Source of the DNA: Scyliorhinus canicula
Taxonomy: Eukaryota
Assembly: GCF_902713615.1 (NCBI RefSeq)
Contig: NC_052146.1
Coordinates: 128,133,875-128,197,874 of the forward strand
DNA length: 64,000 nt
Reading direction: 5' to 3'
The notes beneath the pieces were generated by a model, which searched no databases, was not told the DNA's origin, and was given only the letters and a program-made list of their open reading frames with translations. The first letter of the stretch is position 1; each line of letters starts with the position of its first letter. A program made the position numbers and the translations under genes. Below are positions 1 to 57,291 of the stretch, in pieces.

Positions 1-871
1 CGACCATAGTGGGCCGGATCCCGAATAACGATGAGTCAGAATACAGGAGGGAGATAGAGAACCTAGTGGTGTGGTGCAGCGACAACAATCTATCCCGCAA
101 TGCCAGCAAAACTAATAAGAGCTGGTCATTGACTTCAGGAAGCAAAGTACTGTACACACCCCTGTCGGCATCAACAGGGCTGAGGTGGAGATGGTTAGCA
201 GTTTCAAATTCCTAGGCGTACACATCTCCAAAAATCTGTCCTGGTCCACACACGTCGACACTATCACCAAGAAAGCACAACAGCGCCTATACTTCCTCAG
301 GAACCTAAGGAAATTCGGCATGTCCACAGTAACTCTTACCAACTTTTACAGATGCACCAAAGACAGCATCCTATCTGGCTGCATCACAGCCTGGTATGGC
401 AACTGCTCAGTTCAGGACCGCAAGGAACTTCAGAGAGTCGTGAATACCGCCCAGTCCATCACACAAACCTGCCTCCCATCCATTGATTCCATCTACACCT
501 CCCGCTGCCGGGGGAAAGCGGGCAGCATAATCAAGGATCCCTCCCACCCGGCTTACTCACTTTTCCAACTTCTTCCATCGGGCAGGAGATTCAGAAGTCT
601 GAGAACACACATGAACAGACTTAAAAACAGCTTCTTCCCCACTGTTACCAGACTCCTAAGCGACCCACTTATGGACTGACCTCATTAACACTACACCCCT
701 GTATGCGTCATCCGATGCCAGTGTTATTACATTGTGTACCTTGAGTTGCCCTATTACGTATTTTCTTTTATTTCCTTTCCCTTTCATGTACTTAATAATC
801 TGTTGAGCTGCTCGCAGAAAAATACTTTTCCCTGTACCTCGGTACACGTGACAATCAACAAATCCAATCCA
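1..871 (+). mobile_element. Rex1/Babar-type LINE, 3' portion (RT C-terminus, DUF1891-like region, 3' UTR and tail)
   Basis: ORFs 9-215 and 185-679 (FKFLGVHISKNLSWSTH...[11 protein letters not shown]...RLKNSFFP) are typical of the fish Rex1/Babar RT tail. Ends in GTGACAATCAACAAATCCAATCCAA. Confidence 0.85.
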
Positions 872-1899
872 AGAATCTGTGCTTGTCTCCTTCCTGACTG
901 GGCAGATTATGTATCCTGGGGAGGACTGGGTTCCTTCTGACTTTTCCTTGAGATTGGAATATTTTTTTTAAGTCTTTTTCTTTAGAGCTAATAGAATAGG
1001 AGGATGCTGTGATCTCCTGCTGGTAGTCCTAGTTCTCCTTCATTTGTTTTCTTGGGAGGTGTTGATGGCACTGATCATAATCTGAATATATTGCTGCTGC
1101 TCCTCTCTGTATAAATATATGCAATGGTGTTGGCTCTGTGCTGGGCCTGAGATTGATATGATATATATGTCACACCCTCTTAGATCTAGGGTCCTCATGT
1201 ATTTACATTTTTGTTTCCTTATTTTTAAAGGGGTGGGGATAAAAATCTGTGATTGGCTCCTGTATGGGTGCAGATGGGGCTAATATCTGAAGAGAAGAGG
1301 AGGTGGTGTGTCATTGATGTCTCTGATACTTCTGGAGTTTAGGGAGTTGGTGTGTGCCAAAACATTGCACGAAAACCTTATCCTGGACTCTGGTAGAAAT
1401 TATGAGCAATTGCCGTGAGCACCATTTTACCATGGTTTCATGGCCTTACATCATGGCTTCACATCTGATTTCTGGTTGGGCTTAGAGAGGCAACAAGTTA
1501 TGCCTAATGATTGCATCAAGCTAGTTAGACTGCTGTTCTCATGGTCCCCCTCTGCATTCATGTATGCTGAGCCTTTTATTTGTTTGCTGTGCTGTATTAT
1601 TCTTATAGTTTTATTGCATTGTTCATTAAAATGTAAAACCTTGATGTATGCACTTTTAAACAAATGCAGTGATTTATATGGAAGTGACTCAATTGGTTGG
1701 GATTTTCCGCCCCCACCCACGATGGATCCTGTCCTGGCCAGGGCGGAAGATTCAGAGAGGCAGACAAACATCATTGACTTTGGGGGGGAATCTGTGGTCC
1801 AGCTGTGGGTGGGGCCCTACTACTGCCTGCGCACTCATCAAAGCAGGCACTGATACTGGTTCAACAGTGCAAGTGTTGGAAGAGCCAGTGCAATATAGT

Positions 1900-3470
1900 T
1901 GTACTGTCTGGCTTGTAGATTTGATACTGCAGAGTTACAGCTTACTATTGGACAGTCAGATCCCAGAGTGGAATCTGACTCGACAGATCCCAACTTTCTT
2001 CTGGTTCAAGGCATGGATGAACAGAGTCACATGACTACTGATAAACTTCTAACAAAAGAATAAAACTTTTGTTAAGTACATCACCAACATCAGACTTCTG
2101 TTCATAGACTGCTGCTCCCCCTTCAACACCATTATGCCGACAAGACTAATAACCAAACTCTGCAACCTTGGACTTGACCCCTCCCTGTGCAGCTGGATCC
2201 TTGACTTCCTCACCAACAGACCGCAATCTGTCAGGATAGGCAACAGCACCTCCTCCACAATAGTCCTCAACACTGGATCCACAGAAGGAAGTGTGCTCAA
2301 TCCTCTACTGTACTCCCTATGCACACACGACTGTGTGACAAGGTTTAACTCCAGTTTGATCTATAAGTTTGCAGATGATGCGACTATGGTGGGCCGTATC
2401 TCAAGCAATGACGAATCAGACTACAGAAGGGAGATAGATCACTTGGTTGCATGGTGTACCAAAAAGAACCTCTCTCTAAATGTCGGAAAGACCAAGGAAC
2501 TGATCATTGACTTCAGGAAGCACAGCATGACACACACCCTCATCTACACCAATGGCTCCAAAGTGGAGATGGTCGATAGCTTCCTGGGGGTCACCATCAC
2601 CAACAGTCTGTCCTGGCCCACTCATATTGATGCAACAATCAAGAAATCCCAACAACGTCTCTATTTCCTACGGGAGCTAAAGAAATTCAGCATGTCTGCA
2701 TCAACTTACAAACTTCTACAGATGTGTGATAGAGAGCATCCAATCCAGCTGAATCACAGCTTGGCATGACAACTGCTCGGTCCAAGATCGCAAGAAACTG
2801 CAGTGTGGTGAACTCAGCCCAATGCATCACACAAGCTTGCCATTCGCACATTGATTCTGTTTACACCTCCCGCTGCCTCAGGAAGGCAAACATTGTCAGA
2901 GATCCCTCACACCCAGGCTGTGACCTCTTCCAGTCCCTTCCATCAGGCAGAAAATACAGAAGTCTGAAGATCCGCACATCCAGACATAGGAACAGCTACT
3001 AGACTCCTCAACGACTCTCCCTCGAACTGATCTGTTCCCAGTAAGAACACTAGTCACGACACCCTATGCTGGTCTTGCTCATGCATTGCTTGTTTGGCCC
3101 TTGTTACGCACTGTAACCAATGACTATTTATCGATGTACCATTTATCAATGTACTCTGTCGATTATCCTTTTGTCTACTATGTACGTACTGTGTACATTC
3201 CCTTGAGCGCAGAAAAATACTTTTCACTGTACTTCAGTACATGCGACAATAAATAAATATCAATCAATCAATCAATATCAATCGCTAAACAAGAAAAGAT
3301 TGACTATAATACATTACTCCTTCACCCTGGCTATACCTTTACAGATATACACAGATTTATAAGGATAACACAAGTTAGAAACTTTATCTTATACTCTAAT
3401 GTTCTCGGTTAGTACACAGTCCATGTGAACTAATGATCGGAATGTGGTCAGACACACCACACTTTAGAGG
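1900..3470 (-). mobile_element. Possible degenerate solo-LTR fragment interrupted by the Rex1/Babar copy at 2080-3283
   Basis: Non-coding sequence on both sides of the LINE reads as one continuous LTR-like unit. Termini not resolved. Confidence 0.3.
2080..3283 (+). mobile_element. Rex1/Babar-type LINE, 5'-truncated
   Basis: ORF 2134-2769 carries RT motifs ([28 protein letters not shown]). 3' tail GCGACAATAAATAAATATCAATCAATCAATC. Confidence 0.88.
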
Positions 3471-6190
3471 CCAGGTGTGGAGGAACAAGGCAGGACATGG
3501 TGCAATCAATTGAAGAGCCCCCTTTCCTTCTTATCTCTATTTTTAAAAAGGGCCTTTGCACTTTGGACTGCTTGGTACTGTCCAGCGTTTTACGACAGTG
3601 GAGGTCGATTGAGGCCCTGAATTGGGCAGTTAAGGGCTGAGCCAGCCTAAGGGTGGGTGGCCTTGTGGACATCTTACCTAACCTCCATATTATCAGGAAA
3701 GGTAAGGGCTGAGGGAGGAGTTGGTAAGCCAATCACAATACGTATTTTACGTGCCCTGATACATCTCACCCTAAAAACATGGCCGGGGCCATAATGGCAC
3801 CGCCCCCTGATATCGGCATTAAAACAGATTCTCCGGCCAATCGGCGAATGCGATTTCAGCATCGGCAATCAGAGAATCCGATCATGATTCTTAAATTCAA
3901 GTACCCTAAAAAAAATCCAAAAAGAACCCAAAACGGATTTGCCCTAACCGAGAAGGTATCCTTAATCACAGTGAGGACTGAGTTCACCCTACCGACCTCA
4001 ACTCTTCACCCTGCTCTGGCTCCACAGATTTTCCTTATAAAGAAGGTAGGAGGTGATAAAACAAAACATTCCCTTTCAAAAAGTACAAAGACTTTCAGAC
4101 ATAATAACAAAAAGGAGTAAAACTGTGCACAGATTGTACTTCCTATAATCAACTCAATATGATTTTGTTAGAGCAGGATTATCTTCAACACCCACACACT
4201 TGCCTCACATTTCACATGCGCTTACAGGAGAAAGGACAACAATAAATAACCAACAACATATTCACAAGGGAGTAACGTCCTGGATTATAGAAGAATTGCA
4301 GGATAAATTGCAGGATAAAGACACCAGCCATATTGCATAAGAAGGTAAAGGAAAGCCAGGATCAGTGAGCACTTTTCAGGATTTCACAAAGATTCCAATG
4401 ATCGAAGCACGAGGCACCATAATTTCCACTATGCCGTCACTTTGACACCCAGGCGAACCACAGCCTAGACCTCGGTCAGGTGGGATGATTCGACCCACTC
4501 GGCAACCTCCAACCCCTCTTGCCAAGCATCGAGAATAGGACAATACAGGATCAGTGATCGGTGGACCCAAACGACACCTGGTCTCAAAGTTTGGATTTGT
4601 TCTGCTCCATCAAATCTGATGCACCCAGACTCCATATCAGGATTACCAAGACAGGGCAGCCAATATTCTAATTCTATTGCAAACTCATCCCTCACTAGGC
4701 ACCAAACACATGGACACACCTTGCCTGGCTGCTACCTCCCAAACCCGTCAGGGTAAACGACACACCATGCAGTAGGATCTCGACAACATAAAGGCAGGCC
4801 CTCAGCAGGGAAAGTGCTCTTTTGAGTAAAATAACTCTCTCATGCACCTTGATCGCTCTCGTAAAGCTACACCGCAATTCTTTAAAGTGAGCTCCAACGA
4901 TCTACACCAAAGAGCCGAGATCTTCAACAAAGACAACATTTGCGATGGCGGCGATCATCCGGATGCATACAGTACCACTGAAACGCAAGACCACTCACCA
5001 GCAACTATGCTACTGCAAGCTGGGCCCCATCCCAGTCCACTCGAACTGCCATGAACAAACAAGGATTTTTACTATTTATCTCGGTTCTCCTTCGCAAACA
5101 CCAATCAGGATCCTCCAGAGACATAGCCCAAGCCACGTAACCAAGAAAAAGCAAAAATTAAATGTGCATCAGGATAAAACGAAGGGTTAAAAGATGATTA
5201 GAGCCGGAGTTCGCGAAAATGCAACCACTCCCAGAATCGCATCACATGACCCCACCCCTACCCCGAGTTTTGGAAAGTTAAACAAACACATCGGCAACAT
5301 CCTCAGTTATATATTTTAATACTCTGGAGAGGAAAGCATCAAGGGTGGGCTTCTCTGGCCCCACAGCCTTGTCAATGGGGTTTCCCATTGTAGGTCACCC
5401 CACATGTCGGGAAACATCCGGGCATGGGTGTGCTGCAGGCGGGGTGGACAATCCCGCCGATGAAGAATCCCGCAGCTGATCTCTGAAATTTGTCTATCCC
5501 AAATCCCATTTTTTTTTTCTATTAACTTCCATTAACTCCACGTTTTAAAATGTTAGAGTCCTCAAATGTTAGAGATAGAAAATGCTTAGTTAGGTTGGTT
5601 ATCTGATTAGAATGTGATTTATTATAAGTCAATCTTGATGAACAGAGCCAATAACCCATGGATGATAACTTATGCATATTAAATGAAGCCCATGTAGTCT
5701 AATTTCCCTTTCACTGTAAAAATTCAACTATTATAAAGATATTCTGGTACCATAGCCTCAGATACAAATTTATATTTTTTTCAAACTACCTGTTTAATAA
5801 AATAAGTACTTCTTCCTTCTGTACTTCTCTAGAATTTACTTTTAGTAGATAGTTTCCAAAGGGAGGATTATGCTCTTGTGGAGGTAATCACAGTATTATT
5901 TTATTGGCAACACTTTAATTAAAAATGGTCTTTCATATAGTTCAACAGGGATACGATTGTTAATATTAGTCCTTTGGTAAATCAGAGCTGTCAAAGAACA
6001 GCAATATAATTAATAGAACATTTTTGATTTTATTAAACAGCAATGTTAAATAATAAGGTATAATAGTTCAAATATTCAGTAATTGCGATGTCGTTCTGCA
6101 ACTTTTCAATCTTTGTAAAATAGAATGCAGTAAATACAGATGGTTTTAAAGCATATTTAAGTAGTGACTTTTAAAAAGTTCCTAATAACA

Positions 6191-6359
6191 GGGGCTGTTT
6201 AGCACACTGGGCTAAATCGCTGGCTTTGAAAGCAGACCAAAGCAGGCCAGCAGCACGGTTCGATTCCTATAACTGCCGCGCCGGAATGTGGCGACTAGGG
6301 GCTTTTCACAGTAACTTCATTGAAGCCTACTCGTGACAATAAGCAATTTTCATTTCATT
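6191..6359 (+). mobile_element. tRNA-derived SINE (head type 2) with Rex-like 3' tail
   Basis: A-box-like TAGCACACTGG, B box GGTTCGATTCC, tail CTTTTCACAGTAACTTCATT...GTGACAATAAG followed by CATTT repeats. Confidence 0.8.
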
Positions 6360-6659
6360 GGTTAAAAGAGTCATAATGCAGCTGACAAATTGCACATAAC
6401 GCAGCCCCTATACTTCACAATCTGCAGTGACAGATGTTCTATTATTCAAAATGTTACCAAGAAAAATATTAGATGCTAATCTTCAATGTTAAGCACTATT
6501 TGGAAAATAATTTCTCTACCAATCACTATCTCATAACATTGCACATGGGCAGTCAGACCAATTGCAGCATACTGGTGAAGTGGGATTAAACACAAGAACA
6601 GGAAGAGGTCATTGAGCCCCTGAAGCCTGCTTCACCATTCAGTTAGATCACATATTATC

Positions 6660-7027
6660 TATAGAATCCCTACAGTGCAGAAAGAGGCCATTCGGCCCAT
6701 CAGGTCTGCGCCGACCCTCTGAAAGACACCCTACCTAGACCCACTCCCCCACCCTATCCCTGTAATCCTAATCGACACCTAATCCCTATAACCCCTATCT
6801 CCATCTAATCTGCTCTTCTTTGCACACTAAGGGGCAATTTTTAACGTGGCTAATCCACCTAACCTGCACATCTTTGGACTGTGGAATGAACCCGGAGAAC
6901 CCAGGGCAAACCTATGCTGACATGGGGAGAATGTGTTAACTCCACACAGTCAGTTGCCCCAGGCTGGAATTGAAACCGGGTCCCTTGCATGTAGAGGCAG
7001 CAGTGTTAACCATTCTGCCACCATGCC
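6660..7027 (-). mobile_element. HE1-like V-SINE with CR1-derived tail
   Basis: The reverse strand shows a tRNA head (GGCATGGTGGCAGAATGGTTAACACTG), the V-domain, and the tail GGGCCGAATGGCCTCTTTCTGCACTGTAGGGATTCTAT. Confidence 0.8.
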
Positions 7028-7315
7028 TCAAGCCCACCAAGATACCTTTGCTCAATTTCGATATTCTCTTTGCTCCATTTCAATATTCCCTTCAATTCTC
7101 TTTTCTCTGTGCGACCTGCTCCTTGCATTGTGCAGCCCCTTTAAGATTGTCACGAGGCCATGCATGCACACATCTTGCAAGGAACATTGCTTCTGCACAA
7201 CCTGTTTGATCCATGCATGATATATTTCATCCAGATTACTGCATGGCCACACAATTTAGAATTACCCGTACTTAATAATATCCTCGTCAATCTCAGTCTT
7301 GAAAGCTTCAATTGA

Positions 7316-7912
7316 AAGCTGCGGAAGCTAAAGAAATTCGGCATGTCAGCATCGACTCTCACAAACGTCTACAGATATGCCATAGAGAGCATCCTATGTG
7401 GCTGCATCACAGCTTGGTATAGTGACTGCTGGGTCCAAGATCGCAAGAAACTGCAGAGTGTGGTGAACTCAGCTCAACGCATCACACAAGCTTGCCACCT
7501 GCACATTGATTCTGTCTACACCTCCCACTGCCTCAGGAAGGCAAACAGCATAGACCCCTCACACCCAGACTTTTCCCTCTTTTAGACCTTTCCAGGCAGA
7601 AGATACAGAAGTCTGAAGACTCGCACATCCAGACGTAAGAACAGCTTTTGCCACACAGCTACAAGACTCCTCAACGACTCCCCCTCGGACTGATCTGTTC
7701 CCTGTAAGAAAACTATTCATGACGCCCTATGGTGCTCTTGTTTGGCCTTGTTCTGCACTGTAACCAATCACTATTTGTTGATGCACCACTGTCAATGTAC
7801 TCTGTTGATCATTTTTTTGTCTACTATGTACGTATTGAGTACGTTCCCTTGGCTGCAAAAAATACTTTTCACTGTACTTGGGTACATGTGACAATAAATA
7901 TCAATCAATTAA
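7316..7912 (+). mobile_element. Rex1/Babar-type LINE 3' fragment
   Basis: ORF 7343-7585 (IESILCGCITAWY...DRKKLQSVVNSAQRIT). Tail GTGACAATAAATATCAATCAATT. TCAATTGA flanks both ends. Confidence 0.85.
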
Positions 7913-7919
7913 TCAATTG

Positions 7920-8340
7920 AGCAGTATCCACAATCTTTTGTCTTGCAGACTTCTACTGTTATTCATGTGAAGAAGTTTCCTTAGTACACTGCTAAATGGC
8001 CTAGCTCTAATCTTAACATCATTGTTTTTGGTTCTGGATTCCTCCACGAGTGGAAACAGATTTTCTTTACCACCCTAATAAATCATTTTATGATGCTAAA
8101 GGCATCAATAAGATCACTTCTTAATCTTCCATGCTTAATGGGAAAACAGGTTAATTCAACTTGTTCTCAATTTAGATTCCAGTATAATTCTAATGCATCT
8201 AGCTGCACCCTTCACATGACTAACATACCCTTCTTGAGGTGCAGTGTCCAGAACTGAATGCATTACTCTAGATGGTGTCAACTGAAGCATGACGTCCTCG
8301 CCGCTGTATTTCAGTCCGATTGAGACGAAGGCCAACATTT
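7920..8340 (-). mobile_element. Old CR1-type LINE 3' fragment
   Basis: Reverse translation resembles the CR1 motif KKANEMLAF...VMLQL...(HLEYCVQFW)...GLKY. Heavily decayed. Confidence 0.55.
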
Positions 8341-8352
8341 CATTCGCTTTCT

Positions 8353-8576
8353 TTTTTTTAAAATTTAGATTACCCAATTATTTTTTCCAATTAAGGGGCA
8401 ATTTAGCGTGGCCAATCCACCTACTCTGCACATTTTTGGGTTGTGGGGGCAAAACCCACGCAGACACGGGTAGAATGTGCAAACTCCACATGGACAGTGA
8501 CCCAGAGCCGGGATCGAACCTGGGACCTCAGCGCCGTGAGGCGGTTGTGCTAACCACTAGGCCACCGTGCTGCCCT
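8353..8576 (-). mobile_element. Short V-SINE with A-rich tail
   Basis: tRNA head GGGCAGCACGGTGGCCTAGTGG...GGTTCGATCCC. Flanked by TSD TTCATTCGCTTTCTT. Confidence 0.9.
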
Positions 8577-8792
8577 TCATTCGCTTTCTTGATTACATTT
8601 TGATACATTCTGCTCTTTCTTACTGATGTGTATGTAGACACCCAAACTCTGCTCCTCAACAATTCCTACTTTATAGTCATTTAAAATAGACTGAGGGAGA
8701 AATCCATTGATGTAGATGGTAAATTCACTGGCAGGCACCACTACAGGCCTCTAAGCGAGCGGCATTCTTCAATGCTGCCAATGTAGGACAAG

Positions 8793-11236
8793 AAGTCTTA
8801 CAGGCCGATCTCGCTCCTTAATGTAGATGTCAAGTTGTTGGCAACGGTGCTGTCCAGGAGGATGGATGATGTGGTCCCGACGGTGATTCATGAGGATCAA
8901 ACGGGGTTTGTAAAGGGGAGACAACTGAATGCCAACGTGCGGAGGCTCCTTAATGTCATGATGATGGCGCCGGCGGCTGGGGAGTCAGAAATAGTGGGGT
9001 CCATGGATGCGGAGAAATCTTTTGATAGGGTGGAGTGGAGTTACCTGTGGGAGGTGTTGCGGAGGTTTGGGTTTGGTGAGGGGTTCATCAGCTGGGTGAG
9101 GTTGCTGTACAGCTCCCTGGTGGCGAGTGTGGTGACGAATGGGAGGAGGTCAGCGGACTTTTGGCTTTCCAGGGGGATGAGGCAGGGGTGTCCCTTGTCT
9201 CCCCTGCTCTTCGTGTTAGCGATTGAGCCCCTGGCCATGGCGCTGAGGGACTCGAAGAGTTGGAGGAGGATTGTGCGTGGAGGGAGGAGCACCAGCTGTC
9301 GCTGTACGCAGATGATCTGCTGTTGTATGTCGCGGACCCGGCTGAGGGGATGCCAGAGGTGCTGAGGATACTTGAGGAGTTTGGGGACTTTTCGGGTTAC
9401 AAGCTCAATGTGGGGAAAAGTGAGCTGTTTGTCCTGCACCCGGGGGATCAGGAGAGGGAGATAGGTGAACACCCGTTGAAGAGGGCTGAGAGGAGCTTTA
9501 GGTATCTTGGGGTCCAGGTGGCTAGGACCTGGTGGGCCATGCACAGGCTTAACTTTTCGAGGCTGGTGGGGCAGATGGAGGAAGAGTTTAGGAGGTGGGA
9601 CGCGCTACCGCTTTATTTGGCGGGCAGGGTCCAGTCAATTAAGATGACGGTGCTCCCGAGTTTTTTGTTTCTTTTCCAGTGCCTCCCCATATTGATCCCA
9701 AAGGCTTTTTTCAGAAGGGTGAATAAGTCGATTCTAGGGTTCGTGTGGGCGCGGAAGGCCCCCGAGAGTAAGGAGGGTATTTTTGGAGGGAAGAAGGGAG
9801 GTAGGAGGCCTGGCGCTGCCCAACCTGTGTGGATTTTATTGGGCGACGAACGTGGCGATAATTCGCAGGTGGGTGACGGAAGGGGAGGGTGACGCATGGA
9901 AGAGATTGGAGGTAGCGTCCTGTGCGGGTACGAGTCTGGAGGCTTTGGTGATGGCCCCACTTCCACTCCCCCCGGCAAAGTACTCTACGAGTCCGGTGAT
10001 GGTTGCGTCCCTTAAGATTTTGGGACAGTGGAGACGGCATAGGGGGGAAGTGAAGGCCTCAGTTTGGGCCCCGATACGGGCCAATCACCGTTTTGCGCCG
10101 GGGAGAACAGGTGGGGGATTTGGGAGTTGGCACAGGGCAGGCATCAGACAGTTTGGGGACCTCTTCCTGGATGGGAAGTTCGCGACTCTGGAGGAGCTGG
10201 TGGGGAAGTGGAACCTCCCCCCGGGAACGCTTTTAGATATATGCAGGTCAGAGCATTTGTTAAGAGGCAGGTGGCGGAGTTTCCATGGCTGCCGCCAAGG
10301 GGGGTGCAAGATAGGGTGTTTTCGGGGACGTGGGTCGGTGAAGGAAAGATCTCGGCTATTTACCAGCTGATGCAGGAGGAGGAAGAGGCCTCAGTAGAAA
10401 AGCTCAAAGCGAAGTGGGAGGAAGAGCTAGGGGAAGAGATTGAAGATGGGACGTGGTCGGACGCCCTGGAGAGGGTGAATTCCTCCTCCTCTTGCTCACG
10501 GCTCAGCCTAATTCAGCTGAAGGTGCTGCATAGGGCTCACATGACAGGGGCAAGGATGAGCCGGTTCTTCGGAGGGGAAGACAGGTGCGGGAGGTGTTCG
10601 GGAGGCCCAGCGAACAACACCGATATGTTCTGGGCTTGTCCGGCCTTGGAGGGGTTTTGGAAGGGGGTGGCGGGGACTTTGTCTGAAGTGGTCGGCTCTA
10701 GGGTCAAGCCGGGCTGGGGGCTCGCGATCTTTGGGGTAGCTTCGGAGCCGGGAGTGCAGGAGGCGAGAGAGGCCGGCATTCTGGCCTTTGCGTCTCTAGT
10801 AGCCCAGCGCAGGATTCTGTTACAGTGAGGGATACGTGGCCCCGAGCTCGGAGACCTGGATCAATGACATGGCTGGGTTCATCAAGTTGGATAGGATGAA
10901 GTTTGCCCTGAGGGGGTCGGTACAGGGGTTCTTTCGGCGGTGGCAGCCCTTTCTCGACTTCCTGGTGAAGGGGTAGAGAGTGGTCAGTCTCAGCAGCAAC
11001 TGGGGGGGGGGGGGGGGTGGGGGTTTGGGGATGGTTAGGGGGTTTGTTTTTGCGGCGGTGGGTTTGCTATGTTGTTATTTTCTTCTTTCTTGTTTTGCTG
11101 TTGGTTTTTTGTTATTATTTATTTCGGGGGGGTGAGTTCTTTTCTTGTGTTGGTGTGGAAACACGCCTTGTTTGTTTTAAATTGTGGGGAGAAAATTTGT
11201 TATTGAAAAACTTGAATAAAAATTATTTTGTTTTTA
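8793..11236 (+). mobile_element. L1/Tx1-clade LINE, 5'-truncated ORF2 plus 3' UTR
   Basis: RT motifs (IHEDQTGFVKGR, DAEKSFDRVEW, RQGCPLSPLLF, SLYADDLLL), C-terminal C..C...MFWAC, AATAAA. 13-bp TSD AATGTAGGACAAG at 8780-8792 and 11237-11249. Confidence 0.93.
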
Positions 11237-11672
11237 AATGTAGGACAAGGCGCAGAAGCCCTTGTTTCAGCATGCCTCGAGGGAATCAACACAAGTCTGC
11301 ATAGCGTCGCTTACACCAAACAAGCTTTTCCCCCACTCTGATTTGTCTTTCTTAAACTCAAAGTAGGCAATCCTTTAGGCTTTCACATCGAACTCCATTT
11401 GCCAAAGTTTTACCCATTCACTTGATCTGTGAATGTCCCTTCATAGCTTCCTTTTCTCAACTGTGCTACTTACTGCGTCAATCAACTTAATGTTAGCTGC
11501 ACACCTGGACACACAACTAACTCTCTATTCCTTCATCTAAGTCTTTGATTAAAAACAGTGAAAAGCCGGGACCCCAGTACAGAACCCTATCTGGGGAATA
11601 CCCTTTGTCATATCCCACCAAATAGATTAGGCTCCATTTTATCCTTACTCCCTGCCTTCAACCTTCCAAGCA

Positions 11673-11862
11673 TTTTTTTTACAGGAGCAATTTAGTGTCG
11701 CCAATCTACCTAACCTGCACATCTTTGGGTTGTGGGGGTGAAACCCATGGAGACACGGGGAGAATGTGCAAACTCCACATGGACAGTGACCCAGGGCCAG
11801 GATTTGAACCCAGGTCCTCAGCACCGTAGTCTCATTGCTAACCACTGCACCCCGTGCTGCCC
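11673..11862 (-). mobile_element. Short V-SINE
   Basis: Same family as 8353-8576. Confidence 0.85.
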
Positions 11863-13347
11863 TCGTCCAAGAAATTTTTAACCCATATTTCGCTCTGAAA
11901 TTTCTGCACTTTCATTTTTGTTAATAATCTCTTTTGCAGGAACAGGTAGGGCTAGAGCCCACCTGCATAATTCAATCCCCATTTTACTATGAGAGGCACT
12001 GGTCAATATGCATGCCTAATAACTTTGCAGGAATAGAAACTATTTAGCAGCATGATTGCTTGGATTCTGATGCCAGATTCTGAACAACACTAGTGCAAAT
12101 TAAAAAAGAAAGTTAAAAACCACTTTGCTCTAAGTTTATATTTTTTTGAATTTTTGTGCCAATCCAGTGCCAGCATCAAGGATTCCCAGATTGGATATCA
12201 CACCAGCAGATGTACTTCTGTCCCAATAATATACTTTGACTGAAACTCGCCCATTGCTCTAAAGTATGTGTGGGCACATCACCAATCCTTTTGGTCTCTC
12301 TAAGCGATAGCCAACTTATTGCACATTGCGCCAAAATATGACATGTGGCTCACACCCATAAGAAACTGTGTTGGACTGCACATCTCATTTTGTAGAAATG
12401 AGCTATCAGAAACAAGAGGTTTCAAACTAATCCCTCAGAAGTAAATATAAAGCAAACTCCCAGAGGCACTATCGCCATCCACTCTACCCCAATATTTCCC
12501 AGACATTGCCTTTAAAATAAATATTATTTTCTCTCTTTTTCCAACACTGCCCACCCCAGATTTTGGTCAGGACAACATACGGGCAACTGCAGCTATTGGT
12601 CAAGGTCACCTTGCAGATTGTCAGGAGGAGAGTGTTACAGATTGCAACTAAAAGGTGGAACGTTTTCCACCATTTCCCTCATTCCATTCCCTCAGCATCT
12701 TCAATTCACCCAATGTTGCTGGCCTGAGGAAAGGTAGACTGAAGGTATTCAAAAACAGAACACTTAATAGACACCATCTCAATGTGTCAGTAACAAAAAA
12801 AAATCATGCAGGGTTTGAAAGCCCTATTGTTTGTGTCTAAAGACATGCAAATATTTATGGGACACAAAGATTAAATGCACTTGTGAGGGGAAGAGTAAAG
12901 GAAAAGAGAAGCTGCAATTGCCTACATGAATGCAGATACATTTAAGCTGAATTACGTTGTAAACTATCTTTCCGATATTGTTGTTGAATAACAATCATAA
13001 AAATTGCAAAGTCATAAGTCCTGGGATAAAGTACCAAACATGAATAGATATAAGAATAAATTTAAGTCATATATTTTATGCTAACTACCAATATTTTCCC
13101 AGGTATATACTAAATCATGTGTCATTTAGAAAAAACACTCAGAATGCAACGGTTACTGAAGAGTTCAAATGTATTTGCTGTACAGGTAGATAGCCATTTG
13201 GAATTCATGTCCTGCTTTTATATAAAGATTATCGTACATATTCTGCGCTTTGCACCAATAAGAATTGCAGTTTGATCAATTCAATCTTCACAATATGCCA
13301 AAGCATGAGTGGTCCAAAACGTTAAAAATAATAAAGGTATACCATAC

Positions 13348-13434
13348 CTGAACCTCTTGGTTTGTGAATATCTGCTCATTAACTTCACATGCAACTAACA
13401 CTACCAGTTCCCACTCCATCTTCTGTACTGGCAT
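13348..13434 (-). CDS. RCAN2: First coding exon of the short isoform of a regulator of calcineurin (calcipressin), most like RCAN2 exon 4
   Basis: The minus strand reads ATG(13434) MPVQKMEWELVVLVACEVNEQIFTNQEVQ, 29 codons, preceded by an in-frame TGA and ending at a canonical phase-0 donor CAG|GTATGG (13348|13347). It aligns without gaps to the mammalian RCAN2 short-isoform N-terminus as recalled ([29 protein letters not shown]). Paralog assignment (RCAN2 vs RCAN3) is inference. Confidence 0.82.
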
Positions 13435-14000
13435 TCTTCAATGTGCTTAATCTATTTTTGTAGTTTCTCCACTCTCGTCTTCTCTCTTCCTCCGTAGCAT
13501 AGGAAAATCAGCACTCAGGACCTCTACCAAAACACAGTTTGGCTGATGCTTCTGAGCATCACCAATAATGTTATAAAACACAATGTATTCAAGGATCTTT
13601 TTAAAAAACAGGCTTTTTAAAAATCAGCTGCGAATGATGATCCTGCTTACAGCCAGCTCAGATCCGCACTCCATTTGCCTTCAGGAGATAAATGCAGGCA
13701 CTGAAAACTGAACACAGGGATTTAGTCCTGCCCGTGACATCACTGCAGCACTGACCTGGCATGCTAATTAGCTTGGCTTTCCTTTTCACAATTTATACAT
13801 GCTGCTCAAATTACACAACAAAAAAGGCTGTACAAGCAACCAAGCAAATTAAAATGGTAATAAATGAAGATTTCGCAGAAACTAGAATGGTAAATATTCC
13901 CCATTTATAATTTTAGCTGTAATTTACAGTGACAAACCATTCCCTTAACCTCTACTTCCTACACATCAGAGCCCACCTCTATTTGTATAATATATGGTAT
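13435..14000 (-). promoter_or_regulatory. Putative 5' UTR and proximal promoter of the RCAN short-isoform exon
   Basis: TE-free AT-rich sequence upstream of the exon. Minus-strand TATAAAT at 13797-13791 and 13909-13903, CRE-like TGACATCA near 13735. TSS unknown. Confidence 0.35.
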
Positions 14001-14663
14001 TTGTAGCGAGCTCAGGGGTTGAACAGAAAATCCTTGTTACTGTATTTCAGCTTATGGATGCATCACATGCAGGGCAATAGAATAAACACTCCATCCGACT
14101 CTGGCTTAGGCTATGATCTATCAGACAGGTTTATTGAACTTTAAACAGATAAGTGAATGGTAGCAAGAGCAGACTATAATAGATTTACAATAATTATGGG
14201 CGTAACTGTTTTTCCTTGGGTTACAGAAAACAACAAAGTCATTTCTGCATTAACACTCTCAATTCAAAACTGAACCTGAAGCAGAAGTCCAGGATTAATC
14301 TGCCACTGCAGTTTGGTGTTGATCTATGACAGTCTTTGGCAATGTCCCCATATTTGATGGCTTGGGAACGGCTGCTGAATTTAAACAAGTCAGCCAGAGA
14401 TTTTTTAATGTTTTGAAGATAAACCATAACAAAGGAAATTAAAATATGTAACGCAGATGCCAAATCAAAAATGTATTGTAAACAGATCCACAGGATACTT
14501 GTGTTTGAACTGAATGGCTTGAACCCATTTCTAGGAGCAAATTATCTTGCTTTACCCGACTGCTGTTGCAACAGTCTAATTGTTGAGTTATGGCAAAACC
14601 CCGTTTTTAAAATCATCAACCGGGAAAAAACTTTACAGGTTACGTATCAGAAATGATCTGATT

Positions 14664-14851
14664 GGTCACTGTCAGCAGTTGGGGGAGGAAAGTTCAGGTG
14701 GGGGAAAGGGGCAGGGTTTTTTTTTTTAGTCTTCTGTGTATCGGTTGAAGTGTGGGGGGTGGGGGGGGGGGGCTGTTTTGTTACCTTTCCTATTTTGTGT
14801 TCTTTGTTTTATGTGTAAGATGTTAAAAACCTAACAAAAATATATTTTTTT
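14664..14851 (+). mobile_element. L1/Tx1 3' UTR-only insertion
   Basis: G/T-rich 3' UTR similar to 10980-11236. 13-bp TSD AAATGATCTGATT at 14651-14663 and 14852-14864. Confidence 0.8.
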
Positions 14852-15122
14852 AAATGATCTGATTTTTGAGCTGGTATGTATCAAAAACCTGGGCCTGGGA
14901 CTTCCGGTGGCGGCGATGCGCAGTTGAGCCGCACATTCGGCGGCTCCCGCGAATAACGGACTTTGGGGCTCTTTTCAGGGCCCCCAACGGAGCTGAGGCG
15001 GCAAATCCCAACAGGGGAAGGGGCCAGCAGTCGACCCCAACGGTCTCATGGTCCGGACCAGGAGTGGGGCAGTGAGAAAACCGTTGAAAACACCTAGGAA
15101 AAATCGGGGGCAGGAAAACAAA

Positions 15123-15893
15123 ATGGCGGCCGGCGAAGGCCTCGAGGAGCTGAGGAAGTGGGCCCAGGAGTAGCAGGCAATTCTGCTGAGCTGCTTTCAG
15201 GAGCTGAAGTTGGAGTTGTTGGAGTCCCTGAAGGTAACCAACAGGGAACTGATGGAGACCCAGACAGCCCAGGGGGCTGCGATCCGGGAGCTGCAGCAGC
15301 AGGCCGCCGAAAGGGAGGACGAGGTCGTGGCCGCGGCGGGGAAGGTGGAAATGCACGAGGCGCTCCATAAAAGATGGCAGGAGCGGTTCGAGGAGCTGGA
15401 CAACCGGTCGAGGAGGAAGAATTTGCGGATCCTGGGCCTCACGGAGGGGCTGGAGGGGTCGGACCTAGCGGCCTATGTGGTGATGATGCTAAACTCGCTG
15501 ATGGGGGCTGGGTCCTTCCAGGGGCCCCTGGAGTTGGAGGGAGCCCACAGAATTCTGGCTAGGAGGCCGAAGCCGAATGAGCCGCCGCGGGCGGTGTTGG
15601 TGAGGTTCCACCGGTTCGTGGATCGTGAGTGTGTGCTCCGGTGGGCCAAGAAGGAGCGGAGCAGCAAATGGGAGAACACGGAGGTGCGGATCTTCCAGGA
15701 CTGGAGTGCGGAGGTGGCGAGGCGGAGGGCCGTGTTTAACCGGACGAAGGCGGTGCTCCACAGACGGAGGGTGAAGTTTGGAATGTTGCAGCCGGCGCGC
15801 CTGTGGGCCACCTATAAGGATCGGCACCATTATTTTGAGTCCCCGGAGGAGGCGTGGGCCTTTGTGCAAGCCGAGAAGCTGGACTCAAACTGA
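15123..15893 (+). pseudogene. L1 ORF1p (coiled coil plus Transposase_22-like RRM/CTD) with premature TAG at 15171
   Basis: Motifs LDNRSRRKNLRILGL, LEGAHR, PRAVLVRF, RIFQD, PARL. In-frame stop at codon 17. Confidence 0.88.
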
Positions 15894-16361
15894 GGGTCCC
15901 CCTGATGGGGGATGCTGTATAATACTGTATTTGTATTTGCTTGGTTTAGTGTAAGATGTGGGGTGGCTTTAGGGTGGGTGGGGTGATGTCGTACGGTTTT
16001 TTCTATGTGGGTTTTTAAGCAGGGGTCGGGTGGATGGGTTCGGGCAGAGGGGTAAATGGGGAGTTCGGGGAGCTGGTGGGGGGGACTGACAATGGGAGTG
16101 GCCCTGGAGGAGGTGGGACCCGGCAGGGCGAAAGCGCGGGCTTTCTGCGGGGTTCCCGCGCTGTCAGAGGGTGGGGGCGTGTTTTATTTTCCCGCGCAGG
16201 AGCGGGGGGAGGGTGGACTCGTTGGCGGGCACAATGGAGGAGGGGCAGGCCCACGTGGGGAGGAGCCGAAAGGAGGGCGGGAGTCGCCGGGGTCAGCAGA
16301 AGTTAGCTGGCTCATGGGAGTGCTGTAGAGGGTGGGGTGCAGCTAGGAGGGGTCCGAGCCT

Positions 16362-16394
<33 letters not shown>

Positions 16395-16524
16395 GGGTAC
16401 CAGGTTGCTGCTGAAACGGTCAGGAAGGAGCTGGGGACGCAGGGGGTGCTGGAGGGGGGGAGTTGCCGCAGTGAGAAACTGGCAGAGCGGGGGACGCTGG
16501 CCGGGGGTGGGCAAGGGATAGGGT

Positions 16525-19500
16525 ATGGCTAATCGGCAGGGGAAGGGAGCAGGGAGCCCTCGGATCTGGCTGATAACTTGGAATGTGAGGTGGCTGAATG
16601 GGCCCGTCAAGCGGGCCCGAGTATTTGCGCACCTGAAGGGACTGAAGGCGGATGTGGCCATGCTCCAGGAGACACACCTGAGAGTGGTGGACCAGGTCCG
16701 GCTGAGGAAGGGGTGGGTGGGCCAAGTGTTCCATTCGGGGCTGGATGAGAAGAGTAAGGGAGTGGCGATCCTGGTGGGGAAGAAGTTGTCGTTTGAGGCG
16801 TGGAGGGTGGTGGCTGACAGTGGCGGGAGGTACATGATGGTGAGTGGCAAGCTGCAGGGGAGCGGGTGGTGTTGGTGAATGTCTATGCCCCAAATTGGGA
16901 CGATGCGGGGTTTATGTGGCGTATGTTGGGCCGCATTCCGGACCTGGAGGCGGGGGACCTGATCATGGGGGGGGACTTTAACACAGTACTGGATCCCCCA
17001 TTGGATCGATCCAAGTCCCGGACGGGTAGGAGGTCGGCGGCGGCTAAGGTGCTGAGGGGATTCATGGACCAGATGGGGGGGGGTGGACCCCTGGAGGTTT
17101 GCGAGGCCAAGGGCCAGGGAATACTCGTTTTTCTCCCATGTACATAAGGCCTACTCGAGGATTGATTTTTTTGTCCTGAGCAGTGGGCTGGTGTCGAGGA
17201 TGGAGGATGTGGAATACTCCGCCATTGCCATTTCGGATCATGCCCCGCACTGGATGGACCTCGGGCTGGGGGAAGAGAGGGACCAACGTCCGCTCTGGCG
17301 CATGGAGGTGGGGCTGTTGGCAGATGAGGAGGTGGCCGGGAGGGTTCGGGGGTGTATCGAGAGGTACCTCGAGGCCAATGATAACGGGGAGGTTCGAGTG
17401 GGGACGGTTTGGGAGGCATTGAAGGCGGTGATGAGGGGGGACTTGATCTCCATCCGAACCCATAGTGAGAGGGGGGAGCAGAGGGAGAGGGAGAGACTGA
17501 TAGGGGAGATGGTGCAGCTGGATAGGAGATATGCGGAGGCCCCAGAGGAGGGATTGTTGGGGGAGAGGCGTAGGCTTCAGGCCAGATTTGACCTACTGAT
17601 GACCAGAAAGGCGGAAGCTCAGTGGAGGAAAGCACAGGGGGCGGTGTATGAATACGGGGAGAAGACGAGCAGGATGCTGGCGCACCAGCTCCGGAAGTGA
17701 GACGCGGCCAGGGAGATTGGGGGAGTGAGGGATAGAGCTGGGAAGGTGGTGCGGAGGGGGATAGATGTCAATGGGGTCTTCAGGGACTTCTATGGGGAAT
17801 TGTACCGGCCTGAACCCCCGGTGGAGGGGGGTGGAATGGGGCGCTTCTTGGACAAACTGCGATTCCCGAGGGTGGAAGAGGAGCAGGTGGAGGGACTAGG
17901 GGTGCCGATCGAGCTGGAGGAGGTGGTCAAAGGGATAGGGAGCATGCAGTCGGGGAAGGCGCCGGGGCCGGATGGGTTTCCGGCGGAATTCTATAAAAAG
18001 TATTTGGACCTGTTGGGCCCCCTGTTGGTCCGGACCTTTAACGAGGCAAGGGAGGGGGGGGGGGGGGGGGGGGGGGGGGGCGGCTCTGCCCCCAACTATC
18101 TCACGGACGCTGATTTCCCTGATCCTGAAGCGGGACAAGGACCCTCTGCAGTGTGGATCATATAGGCCGATTTTGCTGCTGAACGCCGATGCTAAGCTGC
18201 TGGCAAAGATCCTGGCCACTAGAATAGAGGATTGTGTGCCTGGGGTCATTCATGAGGACCAGACGGGGTTTGTGAAAGGAAGGCAGCTGAACACAAATGT
18301 ACGAAGGCTCCTCAACGTCATTATGATGCCAGCTGTGGAAGGGGAGGCGGAGATAGTGGTGGCATTAGATGCGGAGAAGGCCTTCGATAGGGTTGAGTGG
18401 GAGTATTTGTGGGAGGTGTTGGAGAGGTTTGGGTTTGGGGAGGGGTTTATCCGGTGGGTGAGGCTGCTCTACGAGGCCCCGATGGCGAGTGTAGCCACAA
18501 ATAGGAGGAGGTCGAAGTACTTTCGGCTGTACCGGGGGACGAGACAGGGGTGCCCCCTGTCCCCCTTGCTCTTCGCGTTGGCGATTGAGCTCCTGGCCAT
18601 GGCATTGAGGGAGTCAGGGAACTGGAGGGGCCGGGTGCGGGGTGGGGAGGAGCATCGAGTGTCGCTGTACGCGGACGACCTGTTGCTGTATGTGGCGGAC
18701 CCGGTGGGGGGTGATGCCGGAGGTGATGAGGAGTCTTAGGAAATTCGGGGGTTTCGCAGGGTATAAGTTGAACCTGGGCAAGAGTGAGGTGTTTGTGGTG
18801 CATCCGGGGGATCAAGAGGAGGGGATTGGTAGGCTCCCATTGAAGCAGGCAGGGAAGAGCTTTAGGTACCTAGGGGTCCAGGTGGCGGGGAGCTGGGGGG
18901 CCCTGCACAAGCTCAACCTCACAAGGTTGGTGGAGCAGATGGAGGAGGAGTTTAAGAGGTGGGATATGTTACCGCTGTCACTGGCGGGGAGGGTGCAGTC
19001 CGTTAAGATGCCGGTGCTCCCGAGGTTTTTGTTCCTGTTCCAGTGCCTCCCCATCCTTATCTCGAAGGCCTTTTTTTAGGAGGGTCAACAGGAGTATCAC
19101 GGGATTTGTGTGGGCGCATGGGACTCCGAGGGTTCGAAGAGTGTTCCTGGAACGAGGCAGGGATGGGGGGGCTGGCGTTGCCCAACCTCTGTGGGTACTA
19201 CTGGGCTGCCAACGCGGCGATGGTGCGTAAGTTGGTAATGGACGAGGAAGGGGCAGCATGGAAGAGGATGGAGGTGGCGTCTTGTGTGGGCACGAGCCTG
19301 GAGGCGCTAGTAACGGCGCCGTTGCCGCTCCCTCCAACGAGGTATACCACGAGCCCGGTGGTGGCGGCTACCCTCAAAATTTGGGGGCAATGGAGATGGC
19401 ACAGGGGAGAAATGGGGGGCTCGATGGAGGCCCCGATACGGGGGAACCATCGGTTTGTCCCAGGGAGCATTGATGGCGGATTTCTGGGCTGGCACAGGGC

Positions 19501-52200: not shown

Positions 52201-53122
52201 TCCTGCAGGTCCCACTCGGCATCCTGCAGGTCCCGCTCCGCATCCCGCAGGTCCCGCTCCGCATCCTGCAGGTCCCGCTCCGCATCCCGCTGGTCCCGCT
52301 CGGCATCCTGCAGGTCCCACTCGGCATCCTGCAGGTCCCGCTCCGCATCCTGCAGGTCCCGCTCCGCATCCCGCTGGTCCCGCTCGGCATCCTGCAGGTC
52401 CCGCTCGGCATCCTGCAGGTCCCGCTCGGCATCCTGCAGGTCCCACTCCGCATCCTGCAGGTCCCACTCCGCATCCTGCAGATCCAGCTTGGCATCCTGC
52501 AGGTCCTGCTCCGCATCCTGCAGATCCCACTCCGCATCCTGCAGGTCCCACTCCGCATCCTGCAGATCCAGCTTGGCATCCTGCAGGTCCCGCTCCGCAT
52601 CCCGCAGGTCCCGCTCGGCATCCTGCAGGTCCTGCTCCGCATCCTGCAGATCCCACTCCGCATCCTGCAGGTCCCACTCCGCATCCTGCAGATCCAGCTT
52701 GGCATCCTGCAGGTCCTGCTCCGCATCCTGCAGATCCAGCTTGGCATCCTGCAGGTCCAGCTCCGCATCCCGCTGGTCCCGCTCGGCATCCTGCTGGTCC
52801 CATTCGGCATCCTGCAGGTCCCGCTCCGCATCCTGCAGATCCCGCTCCGCATCCTGCAGATCCAGCTCGGCATCCTGCAGGTCCCACTCCGCATCCTGCA
52901 GGTCCCACTCCGCATCCTGCAGATCCAGCTTGGCATCCTGCAGGTCCTGCTCCGCATCCTGCAGGTCCCACTCCGCATCCTGCAGGTCCCACTCCGCATC
53001 CTGCAGATCCAGCTTGGCATCCTGCAGGTCCTGCTCCGCATCCTGCAGATCCAGCTTGGCATCCTGCAGGTCCTGCTCCGCATCCTGCAGATCCAGCTCA
53101 GCATCCCGCAGGTCCCGTTCGG
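49225..53122. repeat. 21-bp GC-rich minisatellite, left arm (consensus GCATCCTGCAGGTCCCGCTCC)
   Basis: About 180 units. 36-bp variant units at ~49470-49990 and scattered 20-bp units. Confidence 0.97.
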
Positions 53123-57229: not shown

Positions 57230-57291
57230 CATGTAGACTCATACAGCTGTCATCATGGTTGCAGGCACCAGTGCTGAAAGGGACAGATAGG

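What the first reader, a model, noticed from the sequence alone, without database searches (positions are those of the whole stretch)
13348..13434. Hidden 29-codon RCAN2-like alternative first exon missed by the ORF track
Seen: ATG, 29 codons, and a phase-0 CAG|GTATGG donor on the minus strand, in one of the few long TE-free stretches. Known: short RCAN1/RCAN2 isoforms use an internal-promoter exon encoding 29 aa that is spliced onto the common exons. The peptide shares MP...M, LVAC.V and FTNQEV with the RCAN2 version. Inference: the two-promoter RCAN2 architecture exists in this probable chondrichthyan. No common exon (EKFE.LFR.YD...) was recognised in 1-13347, implying a following intron longer than 13 kb.
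Basis: partly seen in the sequence, partly recalled or inferred. Interest (0 to 1): 0.72.

Follow-up and report, generated by a model that had tools for sequence, protein, structure and literature searches.

The report
Real first exon of shark RCAN2
It is the expected counterpart of a known vertebrate exon, so it is ordinary gene annotation and not a discovery.

Summary
Observation confirmed. The minus strand at 13434..13348 reads ATG plus 29 codons (MPVQKMEWELVVLVACEVNEQIFTNQEVQ), followed by CAG|GTATGG.

- **RNA evidence.** RNA-run contigs of 2.0-2.3 kb from three runs in three studies cover 13347 up to 13692, 13738 and 13748. Each contig ends there, with no upstream exon joined. All stop matching the genome at 13347, the first intron base, which the next exon shares. 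One contig's continuation is printed and reads in phase 0 as ERFEDLFRVY, the start of the RCAN common exon.
- **Similarity.** The peptide matches the human RCAN2-4 (RCAN2S, ZAKI-4 alpha) N-terminus end to end: 13/28 identical, tblastn E 2.6e-4 within the window. It matches other RCAN N-termini less well. The best PDB hit of the spliced 39 aa is calcipressin 1.
- **Conservation.** In a distant relative's contig the coding part is 90% identical, against about 50-65% for intron and flanks. A 166-nt promoter/5'UTR block is 89% identical.
- **Promoter.** TATAAA lies about 45 nt upstream of the longest contig end.
- **Not shown.** No common exon lies in 1-13347, so the intron exceeds 13.3 kb. No long-isoform (exon-3-type) exon lies in the 50 kb upstream. 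"Alternative" and "two promoters" remain inferred.

This architecture is already described for vertebrate RCAN1/RCAN2. The scan also holds a second note on this same stretch (s1-243536). Interest is low.

The parts
13348..13434 (-). Coding part of the first exon: ATG + 29 codons, phase-0 end (CAG). Encodes the isoform-specific N-terminus, which forms the start of the RRM-like domain (LVAC...F).
   Evidence: sequence. (RNA contigs and stranded reads). (best match human RCAN2-4 N-terminus). (78/87 nt identical to L001; 6 conservative replacements, 2 silent changes).
13435..13748 (-). 5' untranslated part of the same exon, about 260-315 nt. It holds several upstream ATGs, among them a 16-codon uORF (ATG 13674) kept in frame and length in the relative.
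   Evidence: contigs of X10, X15 and X2 end at 13692, 13738 and 13748, each at the contig's own end. (uORFs). (about 0.49 of the sampled words of 13100-13700 held by 13 listed runs, and 0.39-0.56 by 18).
13342..13347 (-). Splice donor GTATGG, the start of an intron longer than 13.3 kb.
   Evidence: all three contigs stop matching the genome at 13347. The loose end of X10 (255 letters, first 30 printed) reads, with the shared G, GAA CGA TTT GAA GAC CTT TTC CGG GTA TAT = ERFEDLFRVY.
13749..13800 (-). Core promoter. TATAAA at 13797-13792 lies about 45 nt upstream of the longest contig end. The region is AT-rich and CpG-poor (GC 38%, CpG o/e 0.27 over 13600-14200). A conserved block starts near 13790.
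   Evidence: a TATA-like box is also present a few bases away in L001. (13790-13625 is 89% identical, peak 95%).
1..13341 (-). Intron following the exon. It holds no RCAN common exon and one conserved non-coding block at 12545-12690.
   Evidence: no common-exon motif; best tblastn hit of the exon-5 peptide E 0.18, chance level. (no RNA depth at 12600-12993). (12690-12545 is 78% identical).

Best explanation
13348-13748 (minus strand) is the first exon of the short isoform of an RCAN2-type (calcipressin-2) gene. It is the counterpart of human RCAN2 exon 4, which gives RCAN2-4 / RCAN2S / ZAKI-4 alpha. Transcription starts at about 13750-13765 from a TATA-type, CpG-poor promoter (inferred from contig ends and the TATA box). 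A 5'UTR of about 310 nt precedes the ATG at 13434. The 29 codons supply the first strand and the helix start of the RRM-like domain. The donor at 13348 is spliced in phase 0, across an intron longer than 13.3 kb, to the common exon that begins ERFEDLFRVY; this splice is shown by RNA contigs. The rest of the protein, with the calcineurin-binding motifs, lies outside the window and is inferred. Whether a second, upstream promoter and a long isoform exist in this species is expected from the mammalian genes but not shown here.
For: - Sequence.
- RNA: contigs of 2043, 2295 and 2318 nt from three runs in three studies, under two organism labels, match 13347-13748, 13347-13692 and 13347-13738 with 0-1 mismatches. 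Each contig ends there. Each stops matching the genome at 13347, the first intron base, which the next exon shares. The X10 loose end translates in frame to ERFEDLFRVY.
- Strand: raw oligo-dT reads of X23 give depth 6.1 with the first mate on + and 0.14 on -, which is one-sided. By the usual library convention this fits an RNA on the minus strand.
- Many runs: 13 listed runs hold 0.49 of the sampled words of 13100-13700, and 18 hold 0.39-0.56. The size fits the exon.
- Homology: tblastn of the human RCAN2-4 N-terminus (text of PMC3896409 Fig. S3) hits 13434-13348 over its full length at E 2.6e-4. BLOSUM62 local score is 59, against 27-42 for RCAN1-4, RCAN2-3, RCAN3-4 and RCAN1-1. phmmer of the spliced 39 aa against PDB puts calcipressin 1 (1wey_A) first at E 0.0053, with the next hits at E 0.7 or more.
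- Orthologue: the only hit among 1.84 billion representatives is P0001, 79% identical over the 29 aa, an ORF that likewise reads on into the intron.
- Conservation: coding part 90%, promoter/UTR block 89%, rest of the UTR 63%, intron 49-65%.
- Literature: exons 4,5,6,7 give the 197-aa RCAN2S from an intronic promoter (PMC7468584). The 5'UTR of exon 4 is reported as highly conserved in vertebrates (PMC3896409).
Against: - Pfam's Calcipressin model does not score the 29-aa or the 39-aa peptide; both are probably too short.
- Only 10 residues of the downstream exon could be read, so the assignment to RCAN2 and not RCAN1 or RCAN3 rests on a 29-aa comparison with a machine-read (OCR) human alignment.
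- ERFE at the junction is the RCAN3 spelling (human RCAN2 has EKFE).
- No synteny marker and no other RCAN exon lie in the window.
- Contigs show presence, not absence: a rarer transcript that joins an upstream exon to this one could have been dropped by the assembler.
Confidence: 0.85

Rival explanations
1. The exon is real, but it is the exon-4-type first exon of RCAN1 or RCAN3, or of a lineage-specific RCAN copy, and not of the RCAN2 orthologue.
For: RCAN1-4 also has a 29-aa first exon with L-I-A-C...F. The junction reads ERFE, as in human RCAN3. The only solved-structure hit is calcipressin 1; no RCAN2 chain appeared among the PDB matches.
Against: The end-to-end match (MP...M, LVAC, TNQEV) is to RCAN2-4: score 59 and 13 identities, against 27 and 7 identities for human RCAN1-4. 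tblastn with RCAN1-4 does not find this locus at all among hits up to E 50. The human RCAN3 coding first exon is much longer, as its position numbering in the alignment shows (residues 1-65).
Confidence: 0.1
2. The exon is this gene's only coding first exon in this species (a single-promoter RCAN2), and the long isoform's exons 1-3 are a later tetrapod or mammalian addition. On this reading the exon is not 'alternative'.
For: No exon-3-like coding exon lies in the 50 kb upstream. All three transcript contigs start in this exon. PMC3896409 states that exons 1-3 are conserved among mammals, whereas the exon-4 UTR and coding regions are conserved across vertebrates.
Against: The introns of this gene are large (more than 13.3 kb here), so 50 kb upstream is not exhaustive. 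The long N-termini of human RCAN1-1, RCAN2-3 and RCAN3-4 share DLP..L.AC. That suggests both exon types predate the gene duplications and should be present in cartilaginous fishes (inference).
Confidence: 0.2
3. It is a chance ORF with a chance GT, and the RNA signal is genomic DNA or unspliced background.
For: The ATG + 29 codons + GTRNG pattern occurs 8 times in the window by itself. The runs marked 'RNA?' are not proven to be RNA.
Against: The contigs stop matching the genome at the donor (13347) and go on for about 1.6-1.9 kb of other sequence, starting with an in-frame RCAN motif. RNA depth is zero in most of the neighbouring intron and upstream bins: 12600-12993, 13782-14175 and 14373-14569. 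Conservation peaks on the coding part. The raw RNA reads are strand-specific.
Confidence: 0.01

Closest known systems
Human/mouse RCAN2 exon 4, first exon of transcript RCAN2-4 (protein RCAN2S / ZAKI-4 alpha, 197 aa)
   Same: Both have 29 codons starting at the ATG, a phase-0 donor joined to the common exon (E-K/R-F-E-x-L-F-R-x-Y), and their own transcription start. They share M-P at positions 1-2, M at 6, LVAC at 13-16, V at 18 and TNQEV at 24-28. A strongly conserved 5'UTR is reported for this exon in vertebrates (PMC3896409), and one is seen here against L001.
   Different: About half of the residues differ. The junction has ERFE instead of EKFE. Brain restriction and thyroid-hormone induction of the mammalian transcript could not be tested. 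The upstream exons 1-3 were not found in the window.
RCAN1 exon 4 (RCAN1-4, 197 aa; NFAT-inducible internal promoter)
   Same: The plan is the same: a 29-aa first exon ending in the L-I/V-A-C...F...E core, spliced to the common exons.
   Different: Similarity is much weaker outside the core (score 27 against 59).
Long-isoform N-terminal exons (RCAN1 exon 1, RCAN2 exon 3, RCAN3 exon 4)
   Same: They share the last 15 or so residues, the L-x-A-C-x-V...F core that begins the RRM-like domain.
   Different: In the human alignment they are 56-75 aa long (RCAN2's is 75) and carry the DLP..L motif, which is absent here. No such exon was found on the minus strand of the window.

Membership tests
RCAN / calcipressin family | N-terminal exon ends with the L-[IVF]-A-C ... 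F core of the RRM-like domain | tested here: met
   LVACEVNEQIF at codons 13-23. It aligns to calcipressin 1 chain 1wey_A residues 8-34, E 0.0053, and to all five human N-termini.
RCAN / calcipressin family | Spliced in frame to the common exon beginning [EA]-[KR]-F-E-x-L-F-R/T-x-Y | tested here: met
   The RNA contig loose end at 13347 reads ERFEDLFRVY in phase 0. Compare with the human alignment.
RCAN / calcipressin family | Significant match to the Pfam Calcipressin model | tested here: inconclusive
   No Pfam family up to E 10 for the 29-aa or the 39-aa peptide. The peptides are short, and most of the domain lies outside the window.
RCAN / calcipressin family | FLISPP phosphorylation motif and C-terminal calcineurin-binding motifs in the common exons | not testable with these tools
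   These motifs are not in the window. Only 30 letters of the contigs beyond the junction are shown.
RCAN2 exon 4 / RCAN2-4 short isoform | 29-codon coding part, most similar to the RCAN2-4 N-terminus among RCAN N-termini | tested here: met
   tblastn E 2.6e-4 over the full length. Score 59 against 27-42 for the others. The human sequence is a machine-read figure with OCR slips.
RCAN2 exon 4 / RCAN2-4 short isoform | It is a first exon with its own transcription start | tested here: met
   Three independent contigs end at 13692, 13738 and 13748 with nothing joined upstream. TATAAA at 13797 and a conserved block lie around the start. There are no 5'-end-specific data, so this is support and not proof.
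RCAN2 exon 4 / RCAN2-4 short isoform | It lies inside the gene, downstream of exons 1-3 of the long isoform (an internal promoter) | tested here: inconclusive
   No exon-3-like coding exon lies in 13749-64000 on the minus strand. Non-coding exons cannot be recognised by sequence, and the region searched is only 50 kb.
RCAN2 exon 4 / RCAN2-4 short isoform | Orthology by synteny (RUNX2-CLIC5-RCAN2 cluster, ENPP4/5 neighbours) | not testable with these tools
   No other gene was recognised in the window, and neighbouring windows are not available. A search of the scan's notes for these gene names found nothing.

The most novel reading that the evidence does not exclude
The 166-nt block at 13625-13790 covers the core promoter plus the first 125 nt or so of the 5'UTR. 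It is 89-95% identical to a relative whose neutral DNA is only about 50-65% identical. It carries TATAAA just upstream, a CTAATTAG palindrome, an AGGTCA half-site, a TGATGTCA CRE-like site and a frame-conserved 16-codon uORF. Together with the intronic block at 12545-12690 (TGACCTTGA site), it could be an ancient regulatory module shared across jawed vertebrates that controls transcription and translation of the short RCAN2 isoform. It could also be the only RCAN2 promoter in cartilaginous fishes.
Probability: 0.25. Interest if true: 0.3.

Novelty: already known. Interest (0 to 1): 0.12.

Why it matters
The result gives a correct gene-model piece for this genome: a short coding first exon that ORF-length filters miss. 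It also shows that the exon-4-type start of RCAN2, with its TATA-type promoter and conserved 5'UTR, exists in a shark-like fish. That fits the view that this first-exon type predates the RCAN1/RCAN2 duplication. It does not change what is known about RCAN genes.

Tried and rejected
- **Pfam.** The 29-aa and the spliced 39-aa peptides gave no family.
- **PDB.** The 29 aa alone gave nothing. Only the 39-aa spliced form found calcipressin 1.
- **ESM Atlas.** The 30-aa query gave only low-score unnamed clusters.
- **Protein representatives.** The search returned just one hit, P0001, an intron-reading ORF of a relative.
- **The search for homologous proteins.** With P0001, region 1-40, it found only P0001 itself. 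The length rule (44-140 aa) excludes a protein of about 197 aa.
- **Paper search.** 'FTNQEV', the run accessions of P0001, and 'RCAN2' + 'shark' found nothing useful.
- **Scan notes.** A search for RCAN/CLIC5/RUNX2 found nothing.
- **Rfam on 12000-14600.** It gave only a chance-level snoZ182 match (21 bits against a gathering score of 80, E 0.76).
- **RNA fold of the conserved 5'UTR block.** z = -1.13, no sign of a special structure.
- **Legend conflict.** The Fig. S3 legend of PMC3896409 assigns 197 aa to 'RCAN2-3' and 243 aa to 'RCAN2-4'. The residue numbering in its own alignment and PMC7468584 show the reverse, so I followed the alignment.

Full report
**What is there.** On the minus strand, an ATG at 13434 opens 29 codons (MPVQKMEWELVVLVACEVNEQIFTNQEVQ). 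They end with CAG at 13348 and are followed by GTATGG. An in-frame TGA lies two codons upstream. The frame stays open into the intron for 48 aa in all. The window has no N and no masked letters. Taken alone the pattern is ordinary: ATG + 29 open codons + GTRNG occurs 8 times in the window. The case therefore rests on homology, conservation and RNA.

**RNA.** In one search, 13 listed runs hold 0.49 of the sampled words of 13100-13700, and 18 hold 0.39-0.56; most are marked 'RNA?'. That share is the size of an exon of about 300-400 nt.

I laid four runs on 12600-18500. Each of the three assembled runs has one long contig: X2 of 2043 nt, X10 of 2295 nt (a second organism label) and X15 of 2318 nt. 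Their last 402, 346 and 392 letters match 13347-13748, 13347-13692 and 13347-13738 with 0-1 mismatches. In each case the match runs to the contig's own end. The mRNA 5' ends therefore fall at 13692-13748, and no upstream exon is attached.

All three stop matching the genome at 13347, the first intron base, which the next exon shares. That leaves about 1.6-1.9 kb of each contig off the stretch. The one printed loose end (X10, 255 letters, first 30 shown) gives, as reverse complement and with the shared G, GAA CGA TTT GAA GAC CTT TTC CGG GTA TAT. This reads ERFEDLFRVY in phase 0.

Raw oligo-dT reads of X23 lie almost only with the first mate on + (depth 6.1 against 0.14). By the usual convention for stranded libraries this fits an RNA on the minus strand. 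RNA depth is zero at 12600-12993, 13782-14175 and 14373-14569. From about 14770 onward the high depth comes from repeats at 90-95% likeness.

**Homology.** Searches with the 29 aa alone were mostly blank. Pfam, PDB and the ESM Atlas gave nothing.

Among 1.84 billion representatives there was a single hit, P0001 (E 1.8e-6, 79% identity over the 29 aa). Like the window's ORF, it reads on into the intron after VQ|VWY. It is therefore the same exon in a relative.

For named comparison sequences I used the machine-read alignment of the human RCAN isoforms in Fig. S3 of PMC3896409. It contains OCR slips, which I left uncorrected. Three results follow:
- tblastn of the RCAN2-4 N-terminus against the window hits 13434-13348 over its full length (E 2.6e-4, next hit E 1.5). 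The RCAN1-4, RCAN2-3, RCAN3-4 and RCAN1-1 N-termini and the RCAN2 exon-5 peptide find nothing better than chance.
- Local BLOSUM62 scores are 59 for RCAN2-4 (13 identities end to end, despite a gap caused by a dropped letter). They are 27 for RCAN1-4, 37 for RCAN2-3, 37 for RCAN3-4 and 26 for RCAN1-1. The last three align only over the shared L-x-A-C...F core.
- The spliced 39-aa product (29 aa + ERFEDLFRVY) finds calcipressin 1 (1wey_A) as the top PDB match, E 0.0053. Chance Ras hits follow at E 0.7 or more. Pfam still gives nothing at this length.

**Literature frame.** PMC7468584 (Fig. 3 and Table 1) gives two routes. RCAN2-1/-2 transcripts (exons 1 or 2, then 3,5,6,7) give RCAN2L of 243 aa. 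The RCAN2-4 transcript (exons 4,5,6,7) gives RCAN2S of 197 aa, from a promoter in the intron before exon 4.

The Fig. S3 legend of PMC3896409 swaps the two lengths. Its own alignment numbering agrees with PMC7468584. [quoted passage not shown] That paper does not mention sharks, and the held library has no paper that treats RCAN2 in sharks.

**Conservation.** P0001 is encoded on two Logan contigs, L001 (2817 nt) and L002. L001 aligns to 12505-13825 at 70.6% identity. Identity by region against L001:

| Region | Coordinates | Identity |
|---|---|---|
| Coding part | 13434-13348 | 90% (78/87) |
| Promoter / distal 5'UTR block | 13790-13625 | 89%, peak 95% |
| Rest of the 5'UTR | 13624-13435 | 63% |
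| First 300 nt of the intron | 13347-13048 | 65% |
| Deeper intron | 13047-12700 | 49% |
| Upstream flank | 14450-13950 | 61% |

In the 29 codons there are six replacements, all conservative (V/A, V/L, L/V, N/S, Q/E, N/K), and two silent changes. The donor GTATGGTA is identical.

**Promoter and 5'UTR.**
- TATAAA sits at 13797-13792, about 45 nt above the longest contig end. L001 has a TATA-like box a few bases away.
- The region is AT-rich and CpG-poor (GC 38%, CpG o/e 0.27, against 51% GC for the window). This is a TATA-type promoter and not a CpG-island promoter.
- The conserved block carries CTAATTAG, AGGTCA and TGATGTCA. These are motif resemblances only.
- The 5'UTR has several upstream ATGs. 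A 16-codon uORF starting at 13674 keeps its frame, length and stop in L001. The uORF at 13740 is broken by a 1-nt deletion in L001.
- The block does not fold better than shuffles (z -1.13).
- A second in-frame ATG at codon 6 has a strong context (A at -3, G at +4). An M stands there in human RCAN2-4 too.

**What is not in the window.** No common-exon motif was found in any frame: KFE.LF, FLISPP.SPP, KLGPGE, PSVVVH and others. tblastn with the exon-5 peptide gave no significant hit.

On the minus strand, only one open segment has an [LIVMF]-x-A-C core 13-20 residues before a phase-0 GT, and it is this exon. So no long-isoform coding exon lies in the 50 kb upstream. The window neither shows nor excludes a second promoter.

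**Verdict.** It is best read as the orthologue of RCAN2 exon 4, at about 0.85 for RCAN2 given that it is an RCAN exon, which is near certain. The word 'alternative' and the two-promoter claim remain inference.

Notes of other agents call this genome a catshark; I did not test that. The same stretch is also logged as s1-243536. The arrangement is textbook for RCAN1/RCAN2, so novelty is nil and interest is low, apart from improving the gene model.

One step was left out: a search with a full-length RCAN2 sequence, for which no stored reference existed.

Noticed in passing
window 49257-57230: A minisatellite of about 8 kb: 21-bp unit GGCATCCTGCAGGTCCCGCTC, about 384 copies, 75% matches. It first showed up as a ladder of ERDLQD/EWDLQD pseudo-hits in tblastn.
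   Followed up: partly
window 12545-12690 (minus strand, intron about 700 nt below the donor): A conserved non-coding block, 78% identical to L001 (peak 85-87%) against about 50-65% around it. It holds TGACCTTGA (reverse complement TCAAGGTCA, an extended nuclear-receptor half-site; TGACCTTCA in L001). No RNA depth was seen over 12600-12690, the part covered by the stretch laid. It is a candidate intronic enhancer.
   Followed up: partly
window 13625-13790 (minus strand): The core promoter plus the distal 5'UTR is as conserved as the coding part (89%, peak 95%), while the rest of the UTR is 63%. The block contains CTAATTAG, AGGTCA, TGATGTCA and a frame-conserved 16-codon uORF (ATG 13674). There is no unusual RNA fold.
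   Followed up: partly
window 14770-18500: Very high summed contig depth (hundreds to thousands) at only 90-95% likeness in all runs, with many short contigs and loose ends. These are expressed or abundant repeat families (transposable elements) upstream of the promoter.
   Followed up: no
PMC3896409, legend of Fig. S3: The legend gives RCAN2-3 as 197 aa and RCAN2-4 as 243 aa. The residue numbering of the alignment in the same figure, and PMC7468584, show the opposite.
   Followed up: yes
window 12781-12868 (minus strand): A weak Rfam match to snoZ182 (21.4 bits, gathering score 80, E 0.76), taken as chance.
   Followed up: no
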